Positions 22,740 to 56,557 of a DNA stretch of 64,000 bases are shown one piece after another. The position numbers and the translations under genes were made by a program. The stretch comes from Macrostomum lignano. Taxonomy: Eukaryota. The stretch covers positions 62,001 to 126,000 of the forward strand of contig NIVC01001995.1 in the NCBI GenBank assembly GCA_002269645.1. The letters run 5' to 3'. The notes below the pieces were generated by a model. That model saw only the letters and a program-made list of their open reading frames with translations, did no database searches and was not told where the DNA came from. Within the stretch, counting starts at the first letter, position 1. Each line of letters begins with the position of its first letter.

Positions 22740-25700
22740 TCACAGGCTGAGCACACAGACGCCGCGAGAGTCGCCAACAGCGAACTCCTGCGTGTTCATG
22801 TAGCAGCTGTCTGCCACCGACCAGCTCGCCGCCTCCGCCTGGCAGGACCAGCGAAGGCCAGCCGTCTCAGCCCCGGCGGGGACTGCCTTGTCCGGCTTGT
22901 CGAATGCGCGGCCTGCGGGCGGGGGCGAGGAGGGTGAGGAGGGTAAAGAGGGTGGGGAGGGTAAAGAGGGTGAGGAGGGTAAAGAGGGTGAGGAGGGTAA
23001 ATAGGATGAGGAGGGAAAAGAGGGTGAGGAGGGTAAAGGGTGAGGAGGTCAAATAGGATGAGGAGGGTAGAGGGTGAGGAGGGTAAAATGGTGAGGAGGG
23101 CAAATAGGATGAGGAGGGTAAAGAGGGTGAGGAGGGTAAAAGGGTAAGGCGCACAGAATGTACACAGAATGCTCAGTTACGCATTTTGAGAGAGTTTCTT
23201 GCCCAAAAATTACGAGTACATTCTTAACTAGCTACTGTCATAGTGAAGAAAGAAAAATTAAGTAGGCTAAACGGCACTTTAGTTTAAAGAAGGCAAAGGG
23301 GGTAGAGAATGAGAATGACAAGAAGTATAAGAAGCGAGGCGGGAGACCTTTCCCTTCAGGAGATAAACTCCAGAGTGTCTCACCAGCGGGAGTTCTGAGC
23401 ACCCGCCCGACCCCGGCAGAGTCGGTCATGGCCAGCAGCAGGGTGGATCTGAACACCAGAGCTGACGGTGGACAGTCGGGCAGTGTGTCCAGCAGGGCCG
23501 GCCGGTTGCACCAGCGGACGAGGCGGCTGCTGCTGCCGGCCAGCTCAAAGCGGAAGCGGTGGGCGGAGTAGCGGCCCGGACAGCCGGGCTCGCTGTCGAT
23601 GACCACCAGCCAGCGCTCGGCGAAGTTCCACGCCAGACGGACCGGCCCGTTCAGCCCGAGGCTGGCGTTCGTCTGCGTCAGCCGGAACTCCTCGACGTTC
23701 GATGGCGATGTCGGTCTGGCCGTTGCACCGTCGGCTTCGGGATGTTCAGATCTGGTGAGCGATGGCAGCGACACGATGAAGATGCCGACGCTGGGGCAGG
23801 CGATGAAGAGGCATTCGCCTGTGCAGACGACGTCTTCAGGCTGGTGCAGAGAGAAGCTGGAGAGAACGGGCGGGGCGATGGTGAAGGGTGAAAGTACATG
23901 TATTTAATGCGATGCTCAGTAAGGTGCTCAATGGGTGAGATGCTCAGTGAGGTTCTGAGTGAGATACTCGGTGAGGTTCTGAGTGAGATACTCGGTGAGG
24001 TTCTGAGTGAGATGGTCAGTGAGATGGTCAGTGAGGTGGTCAGTGAGATGGTCAGTGAGGTGGTCAGTGAGGTGGTCAGTGAGATGGTCAGTGGGATGGT
24101 CAGTGAGATGGTCAGTGGGATGGTCAGTGAGGTGGTCAGTGAGGTGGTCAGTGAGATGGTCAGTGAGGTGGTCAGTGAGATGGTCAGTGAGATGGTCAGT
24201 GAGATGGTCAGTGAGATGGTCAGTGAGGTGTTCAGTGAGATGCTCAGTGAGGTGGTCAGTGAGATGGTCAGTGAGATGGTCAGTGAGGTGGTCAGTGAGA
24301 TGGTCAGTGGGATGGTCAGTGAGATGGTCAGTGAGATGGTCAGTGGGATGGTCAGTGAGATGCTCAGTGAGGTGGTCAGTGAGGTGGTCAGTGAGGTGGT
24401 CAGTGAGATGGTCAGTGAGGTGGTCAGTGAGGTGCTCAGTGAGGTGCTCAGTGAGGTGGTCAGTGAGGTGGTCAGTGAGGTGGTCAGTGAGGTGGTCAGT
24501 GAGATGGTCAGTGAGGTGCTCAGTGAGGTGGTCAGTGAGGTGGTCAGTGAGGTGGTCAGTGAGGTGGTCAGTGAGATGGTCAGTGAGGTGGTCAGTGAGG
24601 TGGTCAGTGAGGTGGTCAGTGAGATGGTCAGTGAGGTGGTCAGTGAGATGGTCAGTGAGGTGCCCAGTGAGGTGGTCAGTGAGGTGGTCAGTGAGGTGGT
24701 CAGTGAGATGGTCAGTGAGGTGGTCAGTGAGGTGGTCAGTGAGGTGGTCAGTGAGGTGGTCAGTGAGATGGTCAGTGAGGTGGTCAGTGAGGTGGTCAGT
24801 GAGATGGTCAGTGAGGTGGTCAGTGAGGTGGTCAGTGAGGTGGTCAGTGATCGAGGTGCTCAGTGAGGTGCTCAGTGAGGTGGTCAGTGAGGTGCTCAGT
24901 GAGGTGGTCAGTGAGGTGGTCACTGCTACACAACACAGACAAGCGTCAGTCAGTCAGTGCGCACCGTTTAGTGATAGCCGGACCAAAGCTGGCATCCACC
25001 GAGCCGTTGCTCTTGACGCAGTGCACCTTGCCGGCGCTGCGATCCAGAATCAGCAGCCAGCCGCGCTGGTGACAGACGCGAACCCGGTGCGGCCGGGCCA
25101 CGCCGCCCATTCGCAGGAATCGCGGCGGGCCCGTTCGCAGCGGCAGCGGGTACTTGAATCGGCCGCGACGGTCGTACACGCAAATCACTACAGCGCCGCC
25201 GCCGCTGCCGCCCAGCTGCTCCAGCACGAAGAAGCTGCCGTGTAGAAAGGCCAGCGAAGCTGGTCGATTTTGAGTGTCGAAAGAATTTTTTGCGGCAACT
25301 GCCGGCCGATGCGAGTCGACGGAGGCAGCCAGCTCCAGACGGCCGATTGGCGGCTGATGCTGGGAGTGTTGGAACAAATCTCTGTCTTAATCCTGTTGCA
25401 GCGATACATTGCGCACCCCAAAGCTTCCAACCTATTTTGAATGTGTCTAGCAACCAATACGAGTGCTAACTTTATTCATACGGCTATTAGCCCGTGTGAG
25501 TGAGCATGTGGGGGCTGGATGATTTAGGTAAGTTTAACACATGTATATTTATCAGCTTGAAAAGTTAAGTTGCAGTCACTTGGGACATTTCTTACTCACT
25601 AAAGCCGAGTTTCCAATCCCTTCTTTCTATGGTAAACTTATATCGCAGTCGTCTCTGGTATAACTAGATAGGCCACTCAGCACATTTGCGTGTAAGCTAC

Positions 25701-27721
25701 TTTCAGTTCAGTACGTAGCAAGTTAAACACATAGATCTTATATTTCCTAGATAGGCCACTTTGTATGGCGGTAATAGGGAAAGTCACTTGTTTTGGTTTT
25801 GGTTTTGTTCACTTTTGGTGACTGTGTTTAAGTTTTGGTCACTTGTGCGAAAGCCGTGTATATATCTTTGGTTAAACAGAAGAATTTTAATGAATTTTTA
25901 AACTAAAGCCAAGGCTCATTTATTGGGCTCTTACTCCCCAGCTTAAACCCTCCAATCGCGCCTTTCTACACTACCCCCACCCCGCCCCATTTTTTATTGC
26001 CTTTCTTTGAATTCCAGCCTAAAGCTGTAGTTATTTTAGTGGTTTCGCCCGGTCACACGAGAGGCGAGAGAGGCAGAGGCAAAGAAAAGACTGGGTTTTT
26101 TTGGGGGGGGGGAGGCGCAGAGAGGAAAGAAGGGGACAGAGGGACAGGCATCCAGTGGACAGCCACGACACTTACCCCATCAGCCAGCCAATCAGGAGTC
26201 GCCGCCGGGGGCGAGGCACAGACAGGACGGAAAATAAAGCTGGGACACGGGCAGAGCATAGGCCAGGCCAGGGTGAGACTTGGACTCCCCCTCCCAACCC
26301 AGGCCTGACCCACCGGGCCCAATCAGAGCGAGAGGAGGAGGGGGAGAGAGACAGCCTAGCACAAAACAAGTAGATCCACCACACTACGATACGCCAACAA
26401 CAAAGGCCTGAAAGTTAACATCTTTTTTATTCAAAGACAAGAGCCATAGAATTAAGACAGACTTTGTCGCGGTGATGAAGCATTGGCCCTGGATTATGAG
26501 AGTAAATCGCGCAAGCTCTAATCATAGAATGAAACAAACAGAAGCTGAGTGCGCACACCTCATCGGCTAACGGAAGCGACTCCACTGGGTAGCTCGGGTT
26601 AGAAGCCTCGGCCATTGGCTGCTTCTGCTGCTGCTGCGATTGCTTCTTTCCCCTTGTTCTCGTCCTTTTCTTGTGCGGATGCTGTAGAGAATGGGGGGGT
26701 ATGGTTAGAATAGTTTGAATTGGGAAGATTGCATTGGGGAATGGCGATAAAGATCACCAAGTTAAATTTTACTGGGGGGAGGTAAAATTTACTTAGGGAA
26801 TTGTATCTACTCGCAACTGCTGAGGGGGTGGAGTGAGCTGGGGCAGATGGCAGCTACTGAGGGACAGAGTGAGCAGGGGTAGATAGCAGCTACTGAGGGG
26901 TAGAGTGAGCTGGGGTAGATGGCAGCTACTGAGGGACAGAGTGAGCTGGGGTAGATGGCAGCTACTGAGGGACAGAGTGAGCTGGGGTAGATGGCAGCTA
27001 CTGAGGGACAGAGTGAGCTGGGGTAGATAGCAGCTACTGAGGGGTAGAGTGAGCTGGGGTAGATGGCAGCGGCACTCACGGCAGCCGCAGTCGCCCGCTT
27101 GCCCCCGCCGTCTGGCTGCAGCACGGCCCCGAAGTCCAACAGGGCGCCCGTCAGCTGGTAGGGCGCCTTGGCCTTGGCCAGACTGTCCGACTCCGCCCCA
27201 GATGACTGCCAGTCCTCCTCCTGACTGTCGGCATCATCGGCATCCGCCTCCGCGGCCGCAGCCGCCGACGCCGCGAACGGGTTGTCGGCCTGGCGCCGCG
27301 CCGCCCACTCGTCGTGCCAGTCGATCCGCAGGCCATCTAGCAGTCGTCCCATTCGCCTCATCACCAGCTCGGCGTCGAACCGCCCGACCTGCAGCAGCTC
27401 CGCCTCCCGCAGCAGGCAGGAGTCCAGCCTCTCCTCAACATCGCGAAGCCGCTCCTCTGTCCAGTCGGCTGCTGACGGTGGCGTTGCTCGCGCCGAGTCG
27501 GCGAGCCGCTCGATCTCCGACACGACGCCGACGAGCTGCTGCTGCTGGTCGGCTGCCACCGAGTGGCGCCGGATGTCGGCGAGGAGCTCTGTTCGACGCG
27601 CCTCCAGCTGCTGGACGGCGTCGTCAAAAAAGCCGTTGACTTGGTCGATGAGCTCCTTGCGAGAGTCGACTCGGTTGAGCAGCAGGCGCAGATCGGAGGC
27701 TTTCGAGCCGATCCGCTCCAT
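22740..27721 (-). CDS. Array paralog A: coiled coil + linker + six-bladed NHL-like beta-propeller, about 601 aa
   Basis: Exons 27080-27721, 26559-26681, 24965-25359, 23384-23856, 22740-22912 (1806 nt, phases 0,0,2,1 consistent; the 25359 acceptor is the least certain). QVNGFFDDAVQQLEARRTELL coiled coil, RRQADNPF motif, blades RPASLAFLHG, RPHRVRVCHQRGWLLILDR, QPEDVVCTGECLFIACP, GPVRLAWNFAERWLVVID. AATAAA (forward TTTATT 22705-22710) follows the stop. Confidence 0.8.
22925..23150. repeat. GAGGAGGGTAAA-based purine-rich tandem repeat in the last intron of paralog A
   Basis: Tandem copies visible. Confidence 0.85.
23915..24920. repeat. 12-bp minisatellite (GGTCAGTGAGRT)n in a paralog A intron
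   Basis: Tandem copies visible; source of spurious ORFs reading VSEM, TDHL and SVRW. Confidence 0.95.
26026..26402. mobile_element. Probable solo LTR in paralog A intron 2
   Basis: Starts TGTAGTT and ends AACAACA (TG..CA with an imperfect 7-bp inverted repeat); flanks AAAGC / AAGGC (imperfect 5-bp TSD); contains two CCAAT boxes and AATAAA at 26233. Confidence 0.45.
26830..27070. repeat. 36-bp minisatellite (GAGTGAGCTGGGGTAGATRGCAGCTACTGAGGGRYA)n in paralog A intron 1
   Basis: About seven tandem copies starting just after the donor at 27079. Confidence 0.92.
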
Positions 27722-28216
27722 CGCCGCTGCTGCAGGTCATAAATAAATGGGTCAGCATGTTTTTGAAAACCATCGCCAGGTGAAAATTAAATTTCAAAGA
27801 TTATAAAGAGAAATGAAAATATAGCAAATTCTGCGTTAAATGAAGATTCTGAGTAGAATCAGTCAATTGTATTGAGTAAATCTTTCAACATCACCAGTGC
27901 ATACAGTTGATTGAAATAGAGCCAAACTATTGGATAAAAATGTAATAAAAATTTATAGACACAGTATTAGGCATTATTCCTTACAATGGAAAGACGGAAA
28001 AGTCAAATAAAAAGCCAAAAAACAAAAGTGCTGAATAAAAATGTATCCTTAAGGCCGTTTTCATGCTATTTGTTTAAAATATTAATAAGGCGCAAAAACC
28101 AGACAGACAAAAACATGGAGTGTTGTAAAGTTGTAAAAAACAAGTAAAATCCTTTTATCGCATACATGTTAATGCATCAAGAGTTAGCAACGAGTCGACT
28201 GGGTTTAATAGTAGCA

Positions 28217-28714: not shown

Positions 28715-29630
28715 TCACATAAAAGAACTCATAGCGGTCGAGAACACGCAGCCGTTGTTGCAGCAGGCGGCAATGGAGTCCCTGACGGGGCACAGATTCC
28801 AAACAAGCCAGGGCGCCCTGACTGGCACACTGCTGATCAAGCTGAAGCTGTTCCGATCCAGCACGAGAAACTCGGTCATCCCGCCAGTCCGACGCGACAA
28901 CAGCAGACGATTTTGCACGAATTCGACGCTGGGAATCACTAACGACTGGAACGCTTCGCCCTGACATTCTGCCCGCTCGAACTCAACCGACTTAGCGGAC
29001 TGTCGGCTGGTCGATTTGACAAGTTTAAGCGCGCATAGTCGATAGGCACCGGGCCCAGTCTGGTCCACTATGACCAGCCTGCTCTCATTGGCGTCCCAGG
29101 CCAGCCTGACCGGAGCAAAGAGTCCATAGGCCGCCAGTGAGGTGAATTGACGAATTTTAACCGGCTTTGATGCGTCATCAACAAGCGACACGATGTAGAT
29201 TCCAGCAGCTGGAGAACTGATTATCAATAATTCGCCAGTACTGATGGCGTCCTCTGGCGCTTCCAGCTGCCTGCTGAAATCAAGAAGCAGGCGCGATTGA
29301 TCAGGTTTTGTGAAAAATTCGCTAAACTAAATAAAATTCCCTTAAAAACAACATGAGCGTCAGGCTGTTGATGACTAAAACTCAGACTGGAATCCTCTAA
29401 ATTTTGGTAACTTAAAAAGGCTCTGAAGTGACGGGTTATTTTTTGGTCTCCCCCTTTGCGGCACAAACGCTACCTTTTTTGCTCGTCACAAATACATCTT
29501 CGCACCTCACTCAAACTAAACCTATGAACGCAACCTGGTCTCCGCTTACTGGATGCGACTTGGATTGAGAGTTGAATTCGTACAAAAACATCGGGACTTT
29601 TTCCTATATACTAAAAATGGTCTGTCTGTG

Positions 29631-29663
<33 letters not shown>

Positions 29664-30623
29664 GTGATCGATTAGAGAAAAAATGGCTGGACCGATTTTG
29701 TTCAAACTTGCACTGTTCGATCAGAAATTTTCCCGTGACTGTACATGCATCGCGGCTAAGAAATTGCTCGATGCTAAAGGCATTAAATATTCGAAAAACA
29801 TGCTTTTTTGCAAAGGTCAAGCAAACTTTTCGACTTGAAATGCATTGTAAGAATGCTAGAGAAAAAACTGACTGGTTGAATTCTGGTTCTGAAATAGATT
29901 GCATCATCACTGAATTGTAACTCCGACTTGAATTGAAAATGCAGTATGGAAGCGTAGCACCAGACTTGATTTAAATTGCGTAACCATATTGTTAACTGAT
30001 ACTGACTGACTGAGAAACTGATTATGTCATAACTGCTTCGTGTGATTTACTCTATGCTTGGATTTTAAAGTGTTGAATTATATAAGTGCAAAATTTGATG
30101 TTATCAAAAAGATGAGAACTAGCCTAGAGGTGAACAGACTGAACTGCTAAATGCAGCGACGATGGTTCGAATTTTCATAGAGTATAATTTTTTTAATTAA
30201 AGCTTTTCAACGTCAGGAAAACTAAAAGACTTTTTAAAAAGAAGCGTCATGTAAAAATCATAGTAGCGTCATGTAAAAAATCGTAGAAGCGTCATATAAA
30301 AAATTATAGAAGCGTCATATAAAAATCATAGATGCGTCATTTAAAAAATCATAGAAGCATCATATAAAAATCATAGATGCGTCATTTAAAAAACCATAGA
30401 AGCATCATGTAAACAATCATAGAAGCGTCATTTAAAAAATCATAGAAGCATCATATAAAAATCATAGATGCGTCATTTAAAAAATCATAGAAGCATCATG
30501 TAAACAATCATAGAAGCGTCATTTAAAAAATCATAGAAGCGTCATATAAAAATCATAGATGCGTCATTTAAAAAATCATGGAAGCGTCATGTAAACAATC
30601 ATACTAAAAATGGTCTGTCTGTG

Positions 30624-30656
<33 letters not shown>

Positions 30657-33600
30657 GTGATCGATTAGAGAAAAAATGGCTGGACCGATTTTGTTCAAAC
30701 TTGCACTGTTCGATCAGAAATTTTCCCGTGACTGTACATGCATCGCGGCTAAGAAATTGCTCGATGCTAAAGGCATTAAATATTCGAAAAACATGCCTTT
30801 TTGCAAAGGTCAAGCAAACTTTTCGACTTGAAATGCATTGTAAGAATGCTAGAGAAAAAACTGACTGGTTGAATTCTGGTTCTGAAATAGATTGCATCAT
30901 CACTGAATTGTAACTCCGACTTGAATTGAAAATGCAGTGTGGAAGCGTAGCACCAGACTTGATTTAAATTGCGTAACCATATTGTTAACTGATACTGACT
31001 GACTGAGAAACTGATTATGTCATAACTGCTTCGTGTGATTTACTCTATGCTTGGATTTTAAACTGTTGAATTATATATATATATAAGTGCAAAATTTGAT
31101 GTTATCAAAAAGATGAGAACTAGCCTAGAGGTGAACAGACTGAACTGCTAAATGCAGCGACGATGGTTCGAATTTTCATAGAGTATAATTTTTTTAATTA
31201 AAGCTTTTCAACGTCAGGAAAACTAAAAGACTTTTTAAAAAGAAGCGTCATGTAAAAATCATAGTAGCGTCATGTAAAAAATCGTAGAAGCGTCATATAA
31301 AAAATTATAGAAGCGTCATATAAAAATCATAGATGCGTCATTTAAAAAATCATAGAAGCGTCATGTAAACAATCATAGAAGCGTCATGTAAACAATCATA
31401 GAAGCGTCATGTAAAAAATCGTAGAAGCGTCATTTAAAAAATCATAGAAGCGTCATGCAAAAATCATAGATGCGTCATTTAAAAAATCATGGAAGCGTCA
31501 TGTAAACAATCATAGAAGCGTCATGTAAAAAATCATAGAAGCGTCATATAAAAATCATAGATGCATCATTTAAAAAAATCATAGAAGCGTCATATAAAAA
31601 ATCATAGAAGCGTCATGTAAAAATCATAGAAGCGTCATGTAAACAACCATAGAAGCGTCATGTAAAAAATCATAGAAGAGTCATGTAAACAATCATAGAA
31701 GCGTCATGTAAGCAATCATAGAAGCGTCATGTAAACAATCATAGAAGCGTCATGTAAACAATCATAGAAGCGTCATGTAAGCAATCATAAAAGCATCATG
31801 TAAACAATCATAGAAGCGTCATGTAAACAATCACAGAAGCGTCATGAAAAAATCATAGAAGCGTCATGTAAACAATCATAGAAGCGTCATGTAAAAAGCA
31901 TAGAAGCGTCATGTAAAAAAATCATAGTAGCGTCATGTAAACAATCATAGAAGCGTCATGTAAAGAATCATAGAAGCGTCATGTAAAAAAATCATAGATG
32001 CGTCATTTAAAAAATCATAGAAGCATCATGTAAACAATCATAGAAGCGTCATTTAAAAAAATCATAGAAGCGTCATATAAAAATCATAGATGCGTCATTT
32101 AAAAAATCATAGAAGCGTCATGTGAAAATCATAAAAGCGTCACGTAAAGAATCATAGAAGCGTCATGTAAACAATCATAGAAGCGTCATGTAAACAATCA
32201 TAGAAGCGTCATGTAAACAATCATAGAAGCGTCATGTAAAAAATCATAGAAGCGTCATGTAAACAATCATAGAAGCGTCATGTAAACAATCATAGAAGCG
32301 TCATTTAAAAAATCATAGAAGCGTCATGTAAACAATCATAGAAGCGTCATGTAAAAAATCATAGAAGCGTCATGTAAAAAATCATAGAAGCGTCATGTAA
32401 AAATCGTAGAAGCGTCATTTAAAAATCATAGAAAATCATAAAAATCAAAAATTAAATGCAGCTATAATGCTGTGCTGGGAAAAAAAACTGAGACGTAAAG
32501 GCTCTCAGAGAATAACTGCTGAGATTACGGGGGGGGGTTTCTGAGATGTCAAAGCAAAAGTCAGAAGCTACTTCAAAGTTCATGTACTTTACTCAATTTT
32601 TTTATTGCATTCTTTGTTGGCTCGCCACGGGAGGCGCTTATAGAAGAAGAGTCATGTAAAAAATAAAAGTAGCACTACGAGCGTATGTACGAGCTATACA
32701 TAAAAGAAAAGTCATGTTCAAGTTAAAAGATTCATTTGGGAATTGCTACGATGTCAAAGCTTGGTGGAAATCGTTATAGTGCTGTGATTCTTAAAGAAGG
32801 AATCACTAAAATGTCAAGGCTTAGGGGAGAAGAATTGCTGAGATTTCAAGGCTTTAGGTTGGGTTAAAGTTAGGTTTAGGTCAGGTGTGGGTTGAGGGTT
32901 ATATTTTATCGGGTTTCAAGGTTAACAGAATAACAGGGGATTTTTTAGATTTCAAGGTTTATGGAGGCCATCGCTGACATGTTAAGGCTTACGGGGGGAA
33001 TAGCTGAGATGTCAAGGCTCACGGGGTATAAATGAGATTTCAAGGCTAAAGTCAGAAGCTACATGTAGTTTATTGAAAACTTTTTATTACATTATTTGAT
33101 GCCTCCTCAGGGGAGGGATCGCTGATAAAAAAAGCGTAATGTAAAAAATAAAAGAAGCTTCATGTCGAAGTTAAGAGATTCATTTGGGAATCCCTACGAT
33201 GTCGAGGCTTGCAGGAAATCGCTATAATGCTGTAGTAGTGCTATAGTGACTCTTAGAGAGAATTACTGAAATTTCAATGTTAGGTTAGGGTTAGGGTTAG
33301 GGTTAGGGCTAGGGTTAGGGTTAGGGTTAGGCTAGGGTTAGAAGGTTGACAGATATTTTTAGATTTCCAAGGCTTATTGGGGGCATTGCTGAGATGTCAA
33401 GGGGGAAGTTGATATGTCAAAGCTTGTGGGGGGGGGAATTACTGACATGTCAAGGCTTACAAGGTTTGACAGGAGATTTTTTAAGATTTCAAGGATACAT
33501 GTAGCTTATTAAAAAAACGTGTATTGCATTTATTTGGCTCCCCAACGGGGGCGTAGATTGCTAGTCTTTGCTAAAACTTTTTCCCCAACATACTTGGCAT

Positions 33601-35319
33601 CGTATACGATCTTTTCCTGGGCTGACTTTCCTGGGTTTCACCGAGATGAAAAAATGACCTTTTTGTACACTACGTAGTGTATTTTTTTGAAAAAACCTGC
33701 CTCTAAAACTATCCTTTTTCTAAGAAACGTAATTTCCACCTTCCTACTTCAGTAGTCTTTGTGCACTCCACCATGGTTAGGGTTAGGCCTTTGCACTTTT
33801 CTCTGGATGTCTGCTGTCACGTCCTTCATTTAGCTTAGTCTTCAGCTTAACTCAATTTTAATTTAGCTGTTTTCGATCTGGAATTCATTTTATCGATCGG
33901 CGGAATCGCCTGGATTTAATAAAAATCGTGCTTAGTAAAAGTTGCAACCGATAGTTTATTGATGATTCATTGATAAACTTTGGTGATAAAAACAACAAGC
34001 ACTCACTTTCGACGGAATTCCGGCCCGATTCGGAACTCAAGGCGGCCGGTCGGATCGGTGACTAATACCTGACGATTCGACCTGTCAATCACAATTAGAA
34101 GATTCTGCCTGCTACACGATCGAATTCGATACGGATGAATCACGGGCGGACTGTCCACTTGATGCCTGTAGCTGAAGAAGAACACCTTGAGAAACTTGCC
34201 CGCTGCGCTGTACACAAATATCCTCTTCTGCGGCAGCTCAACAGAGAAATACATGTTTGACAAATAAGTCAGTGATACGGGAAAGTTGTGCAGACTGAAA
34301 GACATAATGATCTCAAATGGCAGCGCATCCTGCACCGCCGACAATGCATCTGCATTGCCGCAGTCAGCTCTGTCGGCATCAGGAGCTGCTGTAGGCAAGG
34401 TGTGACCGCCTCTATTAAAGCCACCTCTGCCTCCTCTGTTGGCTGAGGCGACATCGGACGAGCCGCGTTGAGACGGCCAAGAAAAGTTTCCACCACGAGA
34501 CCGAGACATGCCACGACCAGCTCGAGAACGAGGGCCGCTTCTACCTCGAGATGAAGCCACTTGACCCCTAACTGCAACAGGTGAAAAGAAGTGCGCAGCG
34601 TCATCTGCATCGCCTTCACAGTCATCCTGAGAAGGTGTGTTCGAATTTTCATCGGATGTTTCGTCTTCGACAGTCTGATTGAACTTGTGCAGTTCAGCAG
34701 CTGATCCGTGCTTAGCAGCGCCCCGACCATACGGCCTGGCTCGTGCACCCACACTGACTCCACGAATTCCGTGCGCTCGATAAGGCCTTCTGTGCAGCCA
34801 GGTGCCTCCACGAGCACCGAAAGATCGTTGTTCATCACCGCCAGCTTCATCTAGAGCTGCTGCACCACTGCATTCTTCTTCTCTACTGCTGCGCAACATT
34901 GTGCCAAAATCAACTTTCTGCAGCATCTGATAGTCACAGCTGGCGAAATCTTCAGCCTGGCAGTCTTCGCCGCTGTCGGCTTCTCCGGCGTCCGCAGTCG
35001 AGGCGAACGGATTGTCGGCCTCGCGCCGCATCATCCACTCGTCGCGCCAGTCGATCTTCAGACTGTCCAGCAGACGATGCGTTCGTCGACTAGCCAGCAT
35101 TGCGTCAAAATGGCCGCTTCTGAGACGGATTTCCAGTCTCTGTTCAGCATCAGAATTTGCAGCAGCTTTATAAGCATCCTCTCTGCCATCCTGCTGCTCC
35201 TCGTGCTCTTCAATATCTTTAATGAGCTCGGATCTGCGAGCCTCCAGTTGCGCTATAACGTCGTCAAAGAAACTATTGACCTGACTTTTAAGCTCCACGA
35301 TTCCGGCTGCTTGGCTCAT
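28715..35319 (-). CDS. Array paralog B: coiled coil + linker + NHL-like propeller, about 623 aa
   Basis: Exons 34007-35319 and 28715-29273, phase-2 intron (AA/gtgagt..tttcag/C). QVNSFFDDVIAQLEARRSELI, RREADNPF, PVSLTYL, PYRIRSCSRQNLLIVIDR, EAPEDAISTG, APVRLAWD. The true N-terminus may extend upstream. Confidence 0.8.
30238..32445. repeat. ~23-bp satellite (AGAAGCGTCATGTAAAMAATCAT)n inside Helitron copy 1 (30238-30600 and 31238-32445)
   Basis: Tandem copies visible. Confidence 0.92.
33279..33340 (+). repeat. Interstitial telomere-like (TTAGGG)n inside Helitron copy 1
   Basis: About ten TTAGGG/CTAGGG units; a shorter CCCTAA tract lies at the homologous position about 57890-57914 in copy 2. 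Confidence 0.85.
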
Positions 35320-35427
35320 CGAATGTGATCGGCGAAGTCGAGGAAAACATAAAAAAATGTTTTTAATAATTTAATAACTGTTAATAAAAACGGATCTTGC
35401 TATCAAAGATTTAAGCTTCAGTTGAGA

Positions 35428-48000: not shown

Positions 48001-49689
48001 TTCGTACAAAGAAAATGGCTTGTTCAGGACAGCAAATGAACAGATGAGTGCCGCTGCTCACCACTTGTACCGGGTCTTCTAGTGAGTACCTAGAGTGAAT
48101 AATTACAAAAGATATTTTTATATTCTGAGGCTTCAAATGAGACAAGAGACCTCTCAGGTCAGAAAACAATGATCATATTTTATTCTATGTGAACTTCTAT
48201 AATTAGGTCAGATTAGCATACTTATTTTAGTGCTGAGTACTTTTGATAAAAAATTAAGCTAAATACAGAACAAGGATACGCTAGAATCCTAGGTTATATG
48301 AATTGAAGCAAACAGTTTCAGCTGACGACGTACTTAGCACTAACTCGTGGTCCAAATTTGAATCTCACAATTTCGTATGAATCGACACAAGCAACACGAC
48401 AATTAACCATGTCGACGATCAACAACCAATCGTTGGTGTCGCAGCTTCGAACAGAATAGGGAGTAACATCTACAGACTCATCGTCTTCGTTAGTCAAGTT
48501 TAGCTTGCCTAGACAGCGTAAATCCTGCAAGCGGTATTTCCGAATGCAGTCCCCCTCCACTGTATAAAATCGTCCGTGTACGAAGGTCAAAGACACCGGA
48601 GCACTGACAGTATCGAAATTAGCCAATTCCTCACAGAAGTGTAATGATTCCGAGGACGGAAAATCAGAATTAGAAGAACTGCTTGGTTTGAACTCTACAG
48701 CTGCCTCTTGGTAATCAAAGTTGTCAGGCATATCCTGATAACTTGTAGATTCAATACGCTCTAAGTTGATTTTGGATTCAACCATCTCCTTTCTATCGGA
48801 CGCATCAATAGTAGGATGTGCGCTTCTATAAAAACTAGCCTCTTTGGAGATATTTTCCGAAATCTTCTTTAATGATGAAAACTCGCAAGGACCAAAGCCA
48901 GTAATAATCTTTGTCGAATCGTAAGAATTTTCAGCTGAGGCTGCCTGCGGGCCGCTATCGTTCATTTCATTGGTTAAATGCTTACAAACATTAGACGCGC
49001 TCAACACTCCACTGTCAGAAATGTTTTCAGGGCCACTCCATGGCGATAGGACACGTGAGAAGTCAATTGAGCCGTTTGACGCGATCTGTCCGTAGGCAGA
49101 CTCTTGAGCAGGCTCAGAAACCGTGGCTGGCGACGCACCCGCAGCAAACGGATCGTCGGCCCGACGCTGCCGCATCCAGTCAGCATCTTCCTCGTCACAG
49201 CCATCTTGATGGCTCCAAGCAAACGTCAGACAGGCCAGTAAACGACGAGTGCGACGTTCCGCCTCGGCGAGGTCGATGCCGGAACCATCGTCACCATCGA
49301 CGCTGGGTCGCTCGCGCAGGGCGATGGCTTCGTCCAAGCGTCGCATAAGATCGACCGAGGCGGCATCAGATGAGCCTGCTGATAAAAAAGCATTCGCTCC
49401 AGCTAGCAACGTCTGTTCCGCTCCGTCACCTGCAGCAGCAGCAACCACTAATCTCCGCTCGAGAGCTGCCTGCAATTGCGCCTGGCGCTGTCCCAGCTTC
49501 CGCAACGTCTCGTCGAAGAAAGAATTGAATTATAAGGGCCACAATTCATGTTCTCCAATTGAAAAGAGATAGCCCTGATGCGAACACACTGGAATGCTAA
49601 TGTAGCGACCTAGGTTTGAATCTTAGTAGTGCAAAAAAATTTTTTTATTAAAACACTTAAAAAAACAAAAAATGCTAAATATAAAAGAA

Positions 49690-51040
49690 GCGCAATGTCA
49701 AACATAGAAGAGACAACATATCGAACATAAAAGAGTTACCATGTCAAACATAGAAGAGCGACCATGTCGAACATTTAAGAGCCACCATGTCAAACATAAA
49801 AGACCCACCATGTCAAACATAAAATAGCCACCATGTCAAACATAAAAGAGCCAACATGTCAAACATTAAAAAGCCACCGTATCAAACATAAAAGAGTTAC
49901 CATATAGAACAAAAAAGATCCACCATGTCGAACATAAAAGAGCCACCATGTCAAACATATATGTGACTTTATGTCAAACAATAAAGAGCCACCATTTCAA
50001 ACATTAAAGAGCCACCATTTCGAACATAAAAGAGCCACCATGTCAAACATAAAGAGTCACTATGTCAAACATTTAGGAGCCACCATGTCAAACATATATG
50101 TGACTTTATGTCAAACAATAAAGAGCCACCATTTCAAACATTAAAGAGCCACCATTTCGAACATTAAAGAGCCACCATGTCGAACATTAAAGAGCCACCA
50201 TGTAGAATTTTAAAGAGCCACCATTTCGAACATTAAAGAGCCACCATGTCAAACATTTAGAAGCCACCATGTCAAAGATTTAAGAGCCACCATGTCAAAC
50301 ATAGAAGAGCCACCATGTCATAATAAAGAGAGCCACCATGTCATAATAAAGAGAGCCACCATGTCGAACATAAAAGAGCCACCATGTCGAACATTAAAGA
50401 TCCACCATGTCCAACATATATGTTACTTTATGTCAAACATTAAAGAGCCACCATTTCAAACATTAAAGAGCCACCATGTCGAACATTAAAGAGCCACCAT
50501 GTCGAACATTGAAGAGCCACCATGTAAAACATTAAAGAGCCACATTGTCAAACATAAAAGAGCCATTATGTCAAACATTAAAGAGCCACCATGTCAAAAC
50601 ATAAAAGTGCCATCATGTCAAACCTAAAAGAGCCACCATGTCTAACATAAAAGAGCCACCATGTCGAACATTAAAGAGCCACCATGTCAAAACATAAAAG
50701 TGCCATCATGTCAAACCTAAAAGAGCCACCATGTCTAACATAAAAGAGCCACCATGTCGAACATTAAAGAGCCACCATGTCAAACATTAAAGAGCCATTA
50801 TATCAAACCTAAAAGAGCCACCATGTCGAACATTAAAGAGCCACCATGTCAAACATAAATGTGGCATGATGTCAAACATTAAAGAGCCACCATGTCTAAC
50901 AGTAAAGAGCCACCATGTCGAACATTAAAGGGCCACCATGTAGAACATTAAAGAGCCACCATGTCAAAAATAGAAGAGCCACCATGTCAAACATTAAAGA
51001 GCCACTATGTCGAACAGTAAAGAGCCACCAAGTCAAACAT
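49690..51040. repeat. 22-23-bp satellite (AAAGAGCCACCATGTCAAACATW)n inside Helitron copy 3
   Basis: Tandem copies visible. Confidence 0.9.
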
Positions 51041-51149
51041 AGGAGACGCAATTTCAAATGTAAAAAGAAGCGTCATGCCAATCACAAAGGAGCCATTATA
51101 AAGCTAAAGAAATTGTTGCACTTGCTACTTATTGTCCAGTGGATGCTTG

Positions 51150-51690
51150 CTATTTAAGGATCAATACTTGCTATCAATTGGTTGCTTGCTATCTGGGGTG
51201 CTTGCTATCTTGGGGTGCTTGCTATCAATTGGTTGCTTGCTATCAATTGGTTGCTTGCTATCTGGGGTGCTTGCTATCTGGGGGTGCTTGCTATCTGGGG
51301 TGCTTGCTATCTGGGGGTGCTTGCTTTCTGGGGTGCTTGTTATCGGGGGGTGCTTGCTATCTGAGGGTGCTTGCTATCTGGGGGTGCTTGCTATCTGGGA
51401 GAGCCTACTATCTGGGGGTGCTTGCTATCTGGGAGAGCCTGCTATCTGGGGGTGCTTGCTATCTGGTGGTGCTTGCTATCTGGGGGTGCTTGCTATCTGG
51501 AGGTGCTTGCTATCTGGGGGATGCTTGCTATCTGGGGGGTGCCTGCTATCTGGGGGGTGCTTGCTATCTGGGGGGTGCCTGCTATCTGGGGGGTGCTTGC
51601 TATCTGGGGGTGCTTGCTAACTAGGGGTGCCTGCTATCTGGGGGGTGCTTGCTATCTGGAGGTGCTTGCTATCTGGGGGGATGCTTGCTG
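51150..51690. repeat. 16-17-bp satellite (GGGGTGCTTGCTATCT[G])n inside Helitron copy 3
   Basis: Tandem copies visible. Confidence 0.9.
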
Positions 51691-53798
51691 TCTTAGGATG
51701 TTTTCTTTTTGCATTGCACTTCATCTGAGCAGTTTTTTTATTGACTATGTGAATTGTGAAGGCTTTGTTTGACCATCTTATTGATACTTGCAGAGAACAG
51801 AGATTCTATCTAGATGTCCCCCATCGGGGGGCGAAGATTGCTAGTCTAATCTAATCCGCAACTTTTGAGTCGCCTCTTTTACAGCACTTATATTATCGGC
51901 ATCACAATTTGCGGCAGACTCAGACGCACCAAGCAGACGTTTCAGTTGAGTGGCCTTGGCTCGAATTAATTCGACATCTGTGTCCGATGATTTATTGATC
52001 GGCATCCAGCAGATAGTTGTAGCAGAGGTCACTGCAAAAGCAATTTAGCGAAATAATTATGACAATATGGAAGTGCGGCTTATCATAGATCTATAGGATC
52101 CCACTATTGAAGTGGCAATGGATGCAAAATTATAAAAAATCTTGTATCTCTAACGTTTCACTCACTCTCAGTAGATACTTCCAATATAGGGGTTTAAGTA
52201 AGATCCCTATTTCTCATTATTACCCATTGAGGGAGTTGTAGGAATCTAGGATTTTAAGATTTTACACGCAATGCGTGTGTATGAGTACAAGACGTGAGTA
52301 ATAGACGTGGGATCTGAAAGCGATACCGCCTTTCAATCAGACTTTACACTTCTGAGAGCCTAATTTCCAGATATAATTTGTTACTGCTAAATAGTATTTA
52401 GTTGTTTACAACTAAAAAGTACAAACTTTTACAATACTTTTGAAAACAATCAGCGGAACATTTCTTTAAAAGTCTATTACGTTATTGAAATAAATTGGAT
52501 TCAAATAAATACATGTACGACTACTATAAAGTTAAATCTGAACAGTAACAGAATTCACTTAATGTTAAAAGGTGAAAGTACATATAACAATCTATAGAAT
52601 TCAAAGCGTTGAAAATCAGAACATAAAACAATATTTAATACAATTTGATTAAGACTGAAGACCGTTTGCAAACATTTCCAAACATTTGGAATTAGTAACA
52701 CGGATAAAAAATTCAATCACTATTTCAGTATTGTATAATATTTTTTATGAAAGATTCGTCAACGCCATATCATTTTGTAATGAGTTAAGGACATGATATA
52801 CAGTAACTTAACACTTTACGCTTGTAACTAATTACTTCAACAGATGAGAATAGCTCAGAGGAGATTTTTAATTCCTGGCAGCTGTCGTTAAAAGCGTTAC
52901 GGTGGCAACATTTGAGAAAAAGCAAACAACTTTCTAGTGACCTTGAAGCGACTCTGGGGTAACGACTCTTAGGACTTTTAACGACTTCTGAAAGAGACTA
53001 ACAACAGAGGCGACTGTTGCGTGACGAGCCAATCACGCGAATTGTAGAGTCGCTAAAAAGTCGTTCAAGAGTTATTATGTCGTAAAACTTTTAACGAGTA
53101 CTAACTCAAGTAGACTAAATCGAGTTTAATAGGTTGCAATTAGTATTTACTACGTGTTTCCCTACTTATGCATATTTTGATCCAGAAGCTTTCCTAATAA
53201 TATTTTTGATGGTTTATATTGATTGGCTGGCTGAGCTGGAGAAACTCAAATAAGACTCTACGGCCCCAGAGTTGTTATACATGTAGAAGCGTCCCAGAGT
53301 CATTTGCGTCGCCCTAGAGTCGTTTCAGAGTCGCTGACAATAAAACGCCTCAAAATGACTCTTAGGCGACTCCTTGATGACTTTTTGGCGACTTGTACCG
53401 TGACACTCGTTGCTTTAGAGTCGTCGAGTCCCTTTTTTAATTTCCTGTTACTTACAACCACTCTGGGGACGCTTCTTGGCCTATTAACGTTTTCATCGTT
53501 ACTTAACCTGTTTTCTGTTTTGCAGAGTACTTATATGTAACTTCTCTAGTCCTCAGAGTCCTCGTTAAAAAAACTTGTCTAGATAAAACGAATCACTGGC
53601 TTTACTGAAACAGGCTAGGCATAGAGAAGTTTGAATTTATCGGCCTTTTGACTGTTAAATGATCAAATTTCTTAATCTTCAAAGCTCACAAAAAAGCTTA
53701 CACGTACAAAGCTTCAAGATTTCAGCGAGAAAAACACAATAAAACTTGACCTACTAAGCGACAGGCAGGACAGCAAAAAATAAAACAATTTAAAACGT

Positions 53799-55450
53799 TT
53801 ATTGCAAACTCTTCCAATTAACAATATCGGAAAAGCCATTCTCATAGAAAACAGAAATGGAGTCTTCATCCTCTAGACAGCAAATGTCAACAACGCCAGC
53901 CGCTCTTGAACTAAATAGAGGCGCACTGAGTTCTATTTCGCGACGGCCAGTAGATGGAGCGTTTGTATCAGACGATATGCTGATCAGCTTGCTCGAATCA
54001 CCAGCTGACACCGACACTATTACTCGACCACGCTGAGCAAATATGCTTGGAACGCAGCGACTATTGAAGTCGGTCCAGAGATTTCCAAAAGAAATAAGCG
54101 AAGCAGTTGTGACACTAACAGTAATCTTATACAAAACAATCTTAAACACGTTAGCAGTAGACACTCTGTCAAGAACGACAAGCAACCGCTTTTGTTGATC
54201 GAAGGACAATCGAACAGGTGAAATCAGCTTCAAAGACTCGTTTGACAGAGAGGCCTTGCATTGTTTGCTTTTCGTAAGTGATACAAGATAGATTCCAAAC
54301 TTTGATGAAGCGATAGCTATAACTTCGCCGGCTTCAATTGCATCATCTGGTGGTAGCAGCCGATAGCTGAAAGTAGAGTTAAATAGAGTTATCACAGGTA
54401 AAAAATAGCGAGCTAAAATAAATTTAAATAAAGAAATCTAGACTCTTAACGTTGCGACAATCTACTCACTGCACACTGAAATTCGGCCCCACAATTAAAC
54501 TGGCGACGCCGTCAGGCTGGGCAAGGATAACTTTGCTGTGACGCTGGTCGGCAATAATAAGGCAGTTATTTTTGCGGCATGAGCGAACAACGTGAGGTAT
54601 GAAAGATAGCGATTTTCCATCGATCGTCGATAGAGAAATATGATACTTGAAATCAGAAACTGGTTGAGCTGCTGCCGTCGGAGCGTCGTTGAAACACTTT
54701 ACGACGAACCGGATCGACGCAAATGTAATTGCCCCAAAAGAATGTCGCTGATGCTAGACTTGACAAACCAACAAATTGTGATTGGCAAACAGGTGAATTA
54801 GAAGCGATGGCAGCGGCATTGCTATCTTCACTAGCTACACTAACTGAATCTTTGAGTGATGCTGAAGACTTTGGAGGTAACTCATGTGGAACAAATTTTT
54901 CCTGACTAATCATCGTCCAAACTATGGACTCATTAGATTCTTTACTGCTTGTTTGTTGATCCACCGTTGTAGTTGCTATCTCATTTGTCACCGGACTTGC
55001 GGCGACCCACTCTAGACACTTGTCAAAACTTTGTAGCTCATGCCCTTCCCAGCTAATGCTTAGCGACTGCAGAAGATCGTTAATCTTGGAATTGACTTCA
55101 CTAGAATTCCAGTAGCCCTTCTGAATCGCAGGCTTGTCACTGCCAACAACAGCGTCCAAGTCGGCCTCAACGCGGCACAGCTCATCGATAGGCCAGTTGG
55201 ATTTCTCTGCCACAGAAGCCTCCCAAACGACCTCCTGCAGTTGAAGTCTCTTTTGACGCCAGTCAGTCAGCTCCCGAGCTGCCACAGCGCGCCTCCGCTC
55301 GAGGGCGACAGACAGGCGTTTAAAGTAATTGCAAGGAGGTGCCGGCTCGGTTCCCATTCTCTGGAGCAGCTGCGAAGCTCTTTCTGCCTTAGAGCGAACC
55401 GAGTCGACCAGTTCGCTTTTAGTAGAACAACCAGAATTGTTTGATGACAT
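53799..55450 (-). pseudogene. Array paralog G: coiled coil + propeller with a +1 frameshift near 54650-54680 (pseudogene or assembly indel)
   Basis: Exon 54470-55450 is 981 nt, one base too long for its phase-2 donor (CA/gtgagt); exon 53799-54366 is intact. Frame 0 matches the family up to RSDG and stops at 54653; frame +1 continues FKYHISL..PHVVRSCRKNNCLIIADQ..VGPNFSV. Confidence 0.75.
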
Positions 55451-56131: not shown

Positions 56132-56557
56132 CTACTTGCCAGCCGGTGCTTCCCACTGAATCCTTAATGATTCAATTAAATCTGCCGTTTTACGGTCAAC
56201 ATCGCTAGCATTCCAGGAGCCTCGAATTCTAACAGCAGTCCTGTCGCTGTCAATGGCAGCATCCAGTTCGGCTTCAATGCGGCACAGCTCGGCGACAGAC
56301 AGGCTTGACAAATTGGCAGAGGAAGCTTCTTGCACAGCTTTCTGCAGTTGCGACTGCCTCCGGCGCCAGTCTGCCAACTCCTGCTCAATCGCGGCGCGTC
56401 TCCGCTCCAGAGCTATTGACAGGCGCTCAAACAAGTCACTAGGCAGGGCTGGCTCAGGGCCTATTGACTCCAATAACTGTGACGCCTTTGAAGCCTGCGA
56501 CCGAACAGACTCTAACAGTTCTTCGTTGGTTGAACCGCCAATGAATTCTGATGACAT
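56132..56557 (-). CDS. Array paralog H: coiled-coil-only copy most similar to G (about 141 aa), or an orphan first exon
   Basis: ELLESVRSQASKASQLL..FERLSIALERRRA..ELADWRRRQSQLQ aligns with the G N-terminus; start MSSEF lies 8 nt after a TTTTTTCATGCTAG acceptor; no propeller coding seen before G. Confidence 0.65.
   Translation of the reverse strand: MSSEFIGGSTNEELLESVRSQASKASQLLESIGPEPALPSDLFERLSIALERRRAAIEQELADWRRRQSQLQKAVQEASSANLSSLSVAELCRIEAELDAAIDSDRTAVRIRGSWNASDVDRKTADLIESLRIQWEAPAGK

What the first reader, a model, noticed from the sequence alone, without database searches (positions are those of the whole stretch)
22740..56557. Tandem array of eight divergent coiled-coil + Cys-rich six-blade propeller genes that I cannot assign to a named family
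Seen: eight co-oriented paralogs (A-H) share a coiled coil (QVN.FFD..I..LE.RR.ELL), a W..D/EW...R.ADNPF segment, a very variable linker and six blade-like units (in E: APKSLTY, RPLYVRRC..DWLLI, QDPTDAVSNG..LFICCP, SRPIRIAWS, YEPDFVCL, GHITDLCVV). No signal peptide, TM segment, RING or B-box is visible. Known: a BBC coiled coil plus NHL propeller is the TRIM-NHL layout (Brat, LIN-41, TRIM2/3). Inference: this is a lineage-specific, RING/B-box-less TRIM-NHL-like family under birth-and-death evolution (five intact, one TE-disrupted, one frameshifted, one truncated). That pattern is typical of ligand-recognition or intracellular defence families.
Basis: partly seen in the sequence, partly recalled or inferred. 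Interest (0 to 1): 0.85.

Follow-up and report, generated by a model that had tools for sequence, protein, structure and literature searches.

The report
Flatworm coiled-coil plus NHL-propeller gene array
This stretch of the Macrostomum lignano (flatworm) genome carries a tandem cluster of fast-diverging genes found so far only in this species; each encodes a long helical stalk, a floppy repeat-rich linker and a six-bladed NHL propeller like that of TRIM-NHL regulators, but without their ubiquitin-ligase (RING/B-box) head.

Summary
The window is Macrostomum lignano contig NIVC01001995.1 (62001-126000). Between 22,740 and 56,593, all on the minus strand, lie 8 N-terminal helical modules and 8 C-terminal propeller modules (HMM E 1e-9 to 1e-112). 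They form eight units. A-E are intact. H has a 1-nt frameshift. I has the coiled coil only.

The C-terminal domain models as a six-bladed propeller (pLDDT 91, pTM 0.91). Its best matches, by sequence profile and by fold, are the NHL domains of TRIM2, TRIM3, TRIM71, Brat and Thin. Pattern and Pfam scans found no RING or B-box in the window. Relatives with E<1e-30 among 1.8 billion representative proteins are all M. lignano "hypothetical proteins".

So this is a lineage-specific, TRIM-NHL-like family without RING or B-box, showing gene birth, death and conversion. The coiled coil's homology to the TRIM coiled coil could not be shown. Function is inferred only: non-catalytic, probably dimeric, ligand-binding adaptors for RNA or protein.

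New: the array continues beyond the window. A RING-finger gene with a distantly related propeller sits inside that extension.

The parts
22740..27733 (-). Copy A (GenBank PAA61801, Mlig001862g6, 597 aa). Exons are about 27733-27080, 26681-26559, 25365-24965, 23856-23384 and 22912-22740. It encodes coiled coil, ADNPF motif, linker and a basic NHL-like propeller (pI 9.1). Its introns hold minisatellites (22930-23149, 23935-24922, 26831-27070).
28715..35346 (-). Copy B (PAA61802, Mlig001862g5). Exons are 35346/35319-34007 and about 29273-28715. It is intact. The conserved intron is swollen to 4.7 kb by a 3,966-bp insertion.
29599..33564 (+). Helitron/Helentron-like non-autonomous insertion in B's intron. 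It is absent from homeolog L004. It carries 23-nt satellites. Its 3' end is a hairpin CCCCAACGGGGG followed by CGTAGATTGCTAG, with no target-site duplication.
37188..39492 (-). Copy C (PAA61803, Mlig025850g1). Exons are 39492-38905, 38806-37923 and 37728-37188. It is intact. The linker contains a coding 30-nt x 7.6 minisatellite (38441-38669, GKGASMPSAT repeats). The propeller is basic (pI 9.0).
40118..42517 (-). Copy D. Exons are 42517-41373 and 40709-40118 (578 aa). It is intact. The coiled coil is short and lacks the NPF motif. The linker contains a coding 57-nt x 6.5 minisatellite (41756-42124). The propeller is acidic (pI 5.8).
43198..45051 (-). Copy E. Exons are 45051-43850 and 43738-43198 (580 aa). 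It is intact. This copy was used for the structure model. Its RRADNPF motif is at about 44541-44533.
46319..52005 (-). It is then cut by the insertion. The remaining exons are 49522-48334, 48089-46956 (end of propeller 1, a 108-aa linker, start of propeller 2) and 46850-46319. One ORF therefore holds two propellers (GenBank PAA model of 892 aa, Mlig012779g8). Propellers 1 and 2 are 83-97% identical over about 90 codons after the intron and 30-57% identical elsewhere, which indicates gene conversion.
49523..51844 (+). A 2,322-bp Helitron/Helentron-like insertion in F's first coding exon. It creates an immediate stop (GAC|TAG). It is absent from homeolog L004. It carries a 23-nt x 59 and a 17-nt x 30 satellite. 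Its 3' end is a hairpin CCCCCATCGGGGGG followed by CGAAGATTGCTAG.
53799..55450 (-). Copy H, the most divergent. It runs 55450 to about 54667, has a 1-nt frameshift, continues to 54470, and has a second exon at 54366-53799. The frameshift is also present on contig NIVC01000089 (L003) but not on NIVC01000019 (L004).
56132..56572 (-). Copy I, a 146-aa ORF with the coiled coil only (H-like). There is no propeller before the next gene. The same truncated form is present on both homeologous contigs.

Best explanation
This is part of a Macrostomum-specific tandem cluster of genes. All descend from one ancestor, since all share the same phase-2 intron.

Each gene encodes a cytoplasmic protein with three parts:
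(i) an N-terminal stalk of 100-190 aa made of long alpha-helices, predicted to form a coiled coil;
(ii) a disordered linker of 100-240 aa that evolves by expansion of coding minisatellites;
(iii) a six-bladed beta-propeller of about 275 aa, of the NHL type.

The propeller is most like those of TRIM-NHL proteins (TRIM2/3/32/71, Brat). The genes lack the RING and B-box, so they cannot be E3 ligases on their own.

The most likely mechanism is inferred by analogy with TRIM-NHL proteins, and with Brat in particular, which acts without a RING. The helical stalk would dimerise the protein. The two propellers would then bind ligands through their faces. The basic A/B/C propellers would favour RNA and the acidic D/E/F propellers would favour protein. 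The linker, with its conserved R-x-A-D-N-P-F motif followed by an acidic run, would recruit partners, possibly EH-domain endocytic proteins.

The cluster evolves by tandem duplication, internal propeller duplication, gene conversion and loss. In this haplotype or subgenome the losses are a Helitron-like insertion, a frameshift and a truncation.

Shown here: gene structures, fold, closest relatives, absence of RING/B-box, restriction to M. lignano, and the states of the copies.
Inferred only: dimerisation, the nature of the ligand, and the role of the NPF motif.

The confidence of 0.55 is for the whole statement: about 0.9 for the structural and evolutionary description, and about 0.35-0.4 for the adaptor mechanism.
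For: Paralogy: tblastn and HMM mapping, and the identical intron position and phase in all 8 propellers.

Fold: AF2 pLDDT 91, pTM 0.91, with 24 strands in six blades. Foldseek top hits are the NHL domains of Thin, TRIM71, TRIM2, TRIM3 and Lin41.

Sequence: the family profile hits only TRIM-NHL NHL domains in the PDB (TRIM2 E 1.5e-6; also TRIM3, TRIM71, Brat, Thin). NHL structures from outside the TRIM family do not appear among the hits, even at E<=10. More distant hits in the 1.8-billion-protein library are Pfam NHL-repeat proteins.

N-terminus: it is predicted as a 78-residue helix plus four shorter helices, with pLDDT above 90 for residues 10-50 and a low pTM, as expected for a stalk that needs a partner.

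No RING or B-box. No signal peptide or transmembrane segment.

Coding constraint: dN/dS against the homeologous contig is about 0.4 in stalk, linker and propeller, and 0.1-0.3 in the D, C, E and F2 propellers. GenBank gene names carry Mlig transcript-cluster numbers.

Copy states were verified against an empty-site homeolog. Gene conversion. Charge dichotomy and NPF motif.
Against: Pfam's own NHL model does not reach threshold on any window copy.

The TM-scores to NHL domains (0.65-0.69) are only slightly above those to other propellers.

The N-terminal profile and model match no TRIM coiled coil. Descent from a TRIM-NHL gene therefore rests on the propeller alone, plus the RING-bearing neighbour.

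No expression, localisation or binding data could be found.

A dN/dS of about 0.4 is loose constraint and shows no sign of diversifying selection. Three of the eight units here are damaged.
Confidence: 0.55

Rival explanations
1. Substrate-receptor model. The RING-less copies work together with the RING-finger gene embedded in the same cluster, or with another E3. They would hetero-oligomerise or hand over ligands, so the cluster as a whole would be a diversified ubiquitin-ligase targeting system.
For: A gene with a bona fide C3HC4 RING lies in the same orientation inside the extended cluster (zf-RING_UBOX 33.2 bits, zf-C3HC4 30.7 bits, zf-C3HC4_4 30.5 bits, all above Pfam cut-offs). It ends in a propeller that the family HMM recognises collinearly (18.3 bits, p about 5e-8 for this single test). 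Family members flank it on both sides. Its propeller has an intron within one residue of the family's intron position.
Against: The family's coiled-coil HMM finds no match in the RING gene region. There is therefore no evidence for a shared oligomerisation module. The intron phase differs (1 versus 2). The RING gene is at least 22 kb beyond the window. No interaction data exist. Its full protein could not be retrieved.
Confidence: 0.15
2. Decaying array. The copies are largely redundant relics in a neopolyploid genome and drift toward pseudogenes without a maintained function.
For: Three of the eight units in this haplotype or subgenome are disabled. dN/dS is 0.7-1.1 for F's first propeller and for B. 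Introns and linkers are invaded by satellites and transposable elements.
Against: Five copies keep long intact ORFs with correct splice sites despite 17-53% pairwise identity, which points to a long period of maintained coding. Pooled dN/dS is about 0.4, and 0.1-0.3 for several propellers. F and H are intact on the homeologous contig. The AF2 confidence is very high, which is unusual for decayed sequence.
Confidence: 0.1
3. Not TRIM-derived. An NHL-type (or merely NHL-like) propeller became fused to an unrelated helical region in the Macrostomum lineage. The resemblance to the TRIM-NHL layout would then be convergent.
For: The N-terminal profile and model give only non-specific helical matches. 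The strongest non-family hits in the large library are prokaryote-type multi-repeat NHL proteins. Pfam NHL is below threshold.
Against: Among solved structures, only TRIM-NHL propellers are hit by the sequence profile, and they lead the fold ranking. The order of modules (helical stalk, then linker, then NHL at the C-terminus) is that of TRIM-NHL proteins. A RING-plus-propeller gene sits inside the cluster. The high scores of the prokaryote-type proteins come from 8-13 summed repeat matches.
Confidence: 0.2

Closest known systems
TRIM-NHL proteins (TRIM2, TRIM3, TRIM32/Thin, TRIM71/LIN-41, Mei-P26, NHL-2)
   Same: The C-terminal six-bladed NHL propeller is the best match both by sequence profile and by fold. 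A long helical region lies N-terminal to it. The proteins are cytoplasmic, with no signal peptide.
   Different: There is no RING, no B-box and no filamin domain. The coiled coil is not detectably homologous. A long repeat-rich disordered linker replaces the short coiled-coil-to-NHL connection. The genes are multiplied in a tandem array and sometimes carry 2-4 propellers per ORF.
Brat (Drosophila Brain tumor)
   Same: Brat is a TRIM-NHL member that lacks the RING. From established knowledge of Brat, it acts non-catalytically, as an RNA-binding translational repressor through the NHL top face. The Brat NHL domain is among the profile and fold hits.
   Different: Brat retains two B-boxes and is a conserved single-copy gene. 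Here the B-boxes are absent, the family is lineage-specific, and half of the propellers are acidic.
NHLRC1/malin-type RING + NHL proteins
   Same: The RING gene embedded in the extended cluster has a RING followed, after a low-complexity region, by a propeller. No B-box pattern was found in it.
   Different: This comparison applies to the neighbouring gene, not to the window's copies. Its propeller is only distantly related (18 bits). Its full sequence was not recovered.
Lineage-specific TRIM expansions (e.g. primate TRIM5 cluster, fish finTRIMs)
   Same: A tandem array with gain, loss and gene conversion of a ligand-binding C-terminal domain placed behind a coiled coil.
   Different: Those families keep RING and B-box, use a B30.2/SPRY domain rather than NHL, and show positive selection. 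Here dN/dS between homeologs is about 0.4.

Membership tests
TRIM-NHL (tripartite motif + NHL) | N-terminal RING finger (C3HC4) | tested here: not met
   There is no RING pattern in any of the six frames of the 64-kb window. There is no Pfam RING hit in the ORFs, in annotated family proteins, or in five upstream spacers; the only hit there is a 13.6-bit fragment at noise level. The predicted proteins start 20-60 aa before the helical stalk.
TRIM-NHL (tripartite motif + NHL) | One or two B-box zinc fingers | tested here: not met
   B-box1 and B-box2 consensus patterns are absent from the window and from L001 and L003. There is no zf-B_box Pfam hit.
TRIM-NHL (tripartite motif + NHL) | Coiled coil homologous to the TRIM 'BBC' region, forming antiparallel dimers | tested here: inconclusive
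   AF2 predicts long helices (H2-79, H82-111 and three shorter ones). The profile search of the PDB and the Foldseek search give only non-specific helical matches and no TRIM coiled coil. Dimerisation was not tested.
TRIM-NHL (tripartite motif + NHL) | C-terminal six-bladed NHL beta-propeller | tested here: met
   AF2 gives pLDDT 91 and pTM 0.91, with six four-stranded blades. Profile hits in the PDB are TRIM2 (E 1.5e-6), TRIM3, TRIM71, Brat and Thin. Foldseek top hits are the same set (E 1e-11 to 1e-9, TM 0.65-0.69).
Pfam NHL repeat (PF01436) | Repeat matches above the Pfam gathering score | tested here: not met
   There is no NHL hit at E<=1 on any window ORF. One relative (P0012) scores 16.5 bits against a cut-off of 20. 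The link to NHL comes only from the family profile and the fold.
CNH (citron homology) domain, the UniProt label of relative A0A1I8GPZ1 | Match to the CNH profile; seven-bladed propeller | tested here: not met
   No Pfam CNH hit was found. The model has six blades and matches NHL best. UniProt's labels for family members are mutually inconsistent: CNH, Ig-like, MMS1_N, RIC1, DUF295, WD repeat and nucleoporin.
EH-domain ligands (NPF-motif proteins) | Accessible NPF motif that binds an EH domain | not testable with these tools
   R-x-A-D-(N/D)-P-F followed by an acidic run is conserved in A, B, C, E, F and their homeologs. It lies in a low-confidence segment of the model (pLDDT 55-65). Binding is inferred from general knowledge of EH domains only.

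The most novel reading that the evidence does not exclude
The cluster is a diversified intracellular recognition system. It would comprise at least 12 propeller modules over at least 72 kb, with a RING-finger relative embedded in it. The many RING-less coiled-coil-NHL paralogs would each recognise a different RNA or protein, for example transposon or viral RNAs. They would feed these either to the clustered RING ligase or, through the NPF motif, to EH-domain trafficking machinery. This would be an NHL-based analogue of the TRIM5/finTRIM type of innate defence, invented in macrostomid flatworms.
Probability: 0.1. Interest if true: 0.75.

Novelty: new variant of a known kind. Interest (0 to 1): 0.45.

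Why it matters
TRIM-NHL proteins are conserved regulators of mRNA fate and stem-cell differentiation. Macrostomum lignano is a stem-cell and regeneration model. A species-restricted, multiplied, RING/B-box-less offshoot of that architecture has not been described, as far as the literature held here shows. All members are 'hypothetical proteins' with contradictory automatic names.

The array gives a natural series of divergent NHL surfaces on a common scaffold. It can be used to ask what NHL propellers bind and how new specificities arise. It also shows, at base-pair resolution, how copies in a neopolyploid genome are lost, by a Helitron-like insertion and by a frameshift, while their homeologs stay intact.

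If it is only a fast-evolving adaptor family of modest function, it remains a useful annotation fix for about 30 M. lignano genes.

Tried and rejected
- Pfam on all large ORFs gave nothing significant.
- The N-terminal profile against the PDB, and Foldseek with the N-terminal model, gave only non-specific helical hits. TRIM coiled-coil homology therefore stays open.
- Two word-indexed protein searches, meant to recover the full RING-gene protein from its propeller exon and its RING exon, returned nothing.
- The UniProt label 'RING-type domain-containing' for relative P0010 was checked. No RING pattern or Pfam hit is present, so it is rejected as evidence for a RING in the family.
- I first read a 9-nt alignment overlap at both insertions as a target-site duplication. 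Inspection of the empty sites shows none.
- I considered a mini-intron to rescue H. The shift is a single nucleotide, so no intron can explain it.
- Literature and supplement searches for the family, for TRIM-NHL in flatworms, and for the Mlig gene identifiers found nothing.
- Rfam found no RNA family in the window.
- Paralogs are too diverged (17-53% identity) for paralog dN/dS. Only homeolog comparisons were used.
Full report
SOURCE. The spliced protein of copy E is 96% identical to GenBank 'hypothetical protein BOX15_Mlig019003g2' of Macrostomum lignano. A 23,028-bp locus from contig NIVC01001995.1 is 100% identical to the window. The window is therefore positions 62001-126000 of that contig, in plus orientation.

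OBSERVATION. tblastn with copy E lights up a series of minus-strand segments from 23.5 to 54.6 kb. I derived gene models by reading the frames and the splice sites. HMMs built from the paralog alignments then map 8 N-terminal modules and 8 propeller modules, with E-values from 1e-9 to 1e-112. All 8 propeller modules are split by an intron at the same codon, in phase 2, with canonical GT..AG ends and lengths of 103-4,733 nt. That is strong evidence for descent from one gene by tandem duplication.

The units, from low to high coordinates:
- A: 22740-27733, five exons.
- B: 28715-35346.
- C: 37188-39492, three exons.
- D: 40118-42517.
- E: 43198-45051.
- F: 46319-52005.
- H: 53799-55450.
- I: 56132-56572.

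A-E are intact. They correspond to GenBank models PAA61801-61803 and to homeologs of Mlig019003g2/g3.

F begins with 53 codons of coiled coil (52005-51845). A 2,322-bp insertion (49523-51844) then cuts it and creates an immediate stop. Downstream, the ORF runs from the end of the first propeller through a 108-aa linker into a second propeller.

H has a single-nucleotide frameshift near 54667. This cannot be an intron. I is a 146-aa ORF with the coiled coil only.

It is exactly reproduced.

COMPARISON WITH HOMEOLOGOUS CONTIGS. M. lignano is a neopolyploid (PMC10733133, title and abstract). The array occurs on three contigs. Contig NIVC01000019.1 (L004) is collinear with the window at 94-98% nucleotide identity. 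It lacks the F insertion, the H frameshift and a 3,966-bp insertion in B's intron (29599-33564).

The two insertions are related. On the plus strand both end with a short GC hairpin (CCCC[C]AWCGGGGG), then CGWAGATTGCTAG, then a host T. Neither has a target-site duplication. Both carry 23-nt satellites. These are the hallmarks of Helitron/Helentron-type non-autonomous elements. That assignment rests on my knowledge of Helitron ends and was not tested further.

Nei-Gojobori dN/dS between the window and L004 is 0.24-0.47 for C, D, E and F, and 1.07 for B, where substitutions are few. Pooled, it is 0.37 for the stalk, 0.41 for the linker and 0.40 for the propeller. This is loose purifying selection with no sign of diversifying selection.

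F's two propellers are 83-97% identical over about 90 codons directly after the intron, but only 30-57% identical elsewhere. That is a gene-conversion tract. Neighbouring copies are the most alike: E with F at 52-53%, and C with B at 35%.

WHAT THE PROTEINS ARE. Pfam finds nothing significant on the ORFs. A profile of the eight C-terminal domains, searched against all PDB sequences, returns the NHL domains of TRIM2 (E 1.5e-6), TRIM3, TRIM71, Brat and Thin as its 12 best hits. No other kind of NHL protein appears, even at E<=10.

AlphaFold2 on copy E's domain, with the paralog alignment, gives pLDDT 91 and pTM 0.91, with 24 strands in six four-stranded blades. Foldseek against the PDB ranks the NHL domains of Thin (6xg7, E 1.1e-11), TRIM71, TRIM2, TRIM3 and Lin41 first, with TM 0.65-0.69.

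A filter-free HMMER search of 1.84 billion representative proteins finds 13 proteins with E<1e-30. Those looked up are all from M. lignano. After a gap of more than 20 orders of magnitude come long multi-repeat proteins that Pfam calls NHL. The propeller is thus a divergent NHL domain, and the family is, as far as public data go, specific to this lineage.

Blades 1-4 are the more conserved (34-49% mean pairwise identity). Blades 5-6 are the more variable (20-29%). Propellers of A, B and C are basic (pI 9.0-9.2). Those of D, E and F are acidic (pI 5.2-6.2). Cys content is 2.1-6.1%.

The N-terminal 100-190 aa align well among the copies. The core is F-F-D-x-x-x-x-x-L-E-x-R-R-x-E-L, followed later by R-R-x-x-x-L-L-x-x-L-x-I-x-W. 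AF2 predicts a 78-residue helix followed by four shorter helices, with pLDDT above 90 for residues 10-50 and pTM 0.33. This is what one expects of a stalk that needs a partner.

Neither the profile nor the model matches TRIM coiled coils or anything else specifically. Homology to the TRIM 'BBC' region therefore remains open.

A motif R-x-A-D-(N/D)-P-F-A followed by an acidic run is conserved in A, B, C, E, F and their homeologs. NPF is the classical EH-domain ligand. That is a lead from general knowledge, not a result.

The linkers are unrelated between copies. In C and D they contain coding minisatellites of 30 nt x 7.6 and 57 nt x 6.5. There is no hydrophobic N-terminus. The only hydrophobic 19-mers are buried beta-strands of blade 3.

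RING AND B-BOX. Consensus patterns for RING, B-box1 and B-box2 are absent from all six frames of the window. The only CxxC cluster is the RIM-type zinc finger of an unrelated gene at 12.5 kb. Pfam finds no RING or B-box in the annotated family proteins. It finds none in three-frame translations of five upstream spacers either. One 18-aa 'CGHRFC' fragment upstream of C scores 13.6 bits at E 0.055, which is noise level. The 7.4 kb upstream of copy I are AT-rich and without ORFs.

BEYOND THE WINDOW. The same contig carries more members about 8-30 kb further upstream, in gene orientation. One is a two-propeller gene (PAA61810) preceded by an H/I-like coiled coil. Another is a 480-aa intronless copy.

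Just upstream of these, GenBank annotates a 1,083-aa gene (1,055 aa on the homeologous contig) with RING hits. On the homeolog, the RING CNVCNASFIDPRRIPCGHVFCAPCLVALQDARTRDLACPNC scores above the Pfam cut-offs for zf-RING_UBOX, zf-C3HC4 and zf-C3HC4_4. The gene ends in a propeller that the family HMM aligns collinearly, at 18.3 bits and p about 5e-8 for this one test. That propeller has an intron within one residue of the family's position, though in phase 1. Another family C-terminus lies upstream of the RING exon.

A RING-plus-propeller relative is thus embedded in the cluster. It is the best available hint that the family descends from a RING-bearing ancestor. I could not recover its full protein.

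A second locus encodes relatives with up to four propellers in one ORF.

MECHANISM (inferred). Without a RING the proteins cannot be E3 ligases. By analogy with TRIM-NHL proteins, the stalk should dimerise and the propellers should bind the ligand. Brat shows that an NHL protein can act without ligase activity, as an RNA-binding repressor (established knowledge). The basic propellers of A, B and C fit RNA binding. The acidic ones of D, E and F fit protein ligands. I rate the structural description at about 0.9 and the adaptor mechanism at about 0.35-0.4.

Three rivals are set out in the Rival explanations section:
- cooperation with the clustered RING gene;
- decay without function;
- convergent fusion of an NHL propeller to an unrelated helical region.

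NOVELTY. The fold is known, and lineage-specific expansion of TRIM-like genes is a familiar theme. What appears undescribed is a combination of features: no RING or B-box, this particular stalk, a minisatellite linker, multi-propeller ORFs, and a tandem array restricted to Macrostomum. Searches of the held literature found nothing on it. All members are unnamed or carry mutually contradictory automatic labels. I class it as a new variant of a known kind, of moderate interest.

Noticed in passing
L003 4477-4599 (RING), 7572-8830 (propeller); L001 7092-8100. This is the same contig as the window, about 22-30 kb beyond its high end.: A C3HC4 RING-finger gene, above Pfam cut-offs, ends in a propeller distantly related to the family. 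It is embedded in the upstream continuation of the array and flanked by family members on both sides.
   Followed up: partly
window 49523-51844 and 29599-33564: Two related insertions are absent from the homeologous contig. Both end in a GC hairpin followed by ...GATTGCTAG, then a host T. Neither has a target-site duplication, and both are filled with 23-nt satellites. They look like Helitron/Helentron-type non-autonomous elements. One kills copy F; the other sits harmlessly in B's intron.
   Followed up: partly
window about 48089-47820 versus about 46850-46580 (minus strand): The two propellers of F are 83-97% identical over about 90 codons starting exactly at the conserved intron, but 30-57% identical elsewhere. 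This is a gene-conversion tract between adjacent propeller modules.
   Followed up: partly
window 38441-38669, 41756-42124, 26831-27070, 23935-24922, 22930-23149: Minisatellites lie inside the genes. Repeats of 30 nt x 7.6 and 57 nt x 6.5 are translated as 10-aa and 19-aa repeats in the linkers of C and D. Repeats of 36 nt, 12 nt (82 copies) and 18 nt fill introns of A.
   Followed up: partly
window about 44541-44533 in E; equivalent sites in A, B, C and F: A conserved R-x-A-D-(N/D)-P-F-A motif followed by an acidic run lies at the end of the helical stalk. It is a candidate EH-domain-binding NPF motif. It is absent from D, H and I.
   Followed up: no
propeller domains of A, B, C versus D, E, F: There is a sharp charge dichotomy: pI 9.0-9.2 for A, B and C against pI 5.2-6.2 for D, E and F. 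This suggests two ligand classes.
   Followed up: no
window 53799-55450 versus L004 1741-3430 and L003 18761-20412: The 1-nt frameshift of copy H is shared with contig NIVC01000089 but absent from NIVC01000019. The truncated copy I is identical in form on all three contigs. The losses therefore have different ages.
   Followed up: partly
P0142, P0005, P0159 (contigs of 76, 125 and 480 kb; second locus): Relatives at another locus carry three to four propellers in tandem in one predicted protein, mostly without the N-terminal stalk.
   Followed up: no
window 18968-20270 (-) and 12233-12808 (-): Unrelated neighbours lie downstream of the array: a protein-kinase-domain gene (Pkinase, E 2.9e-12) and a RIM2-alpha-type zinc finger (E 4.2e-11). 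The first 22 kb are also riddled with GC-rich minisatellites that create long spurious ORFs.
   Followed up: partly
L004 1-1068: On the homeologous contig, GenBank joins the coiled-coil-only copy I to upstream exons that carry a PRP4 domain hit. This is either a chimeric gene model or a real fusion transcript.
   Followed up: no
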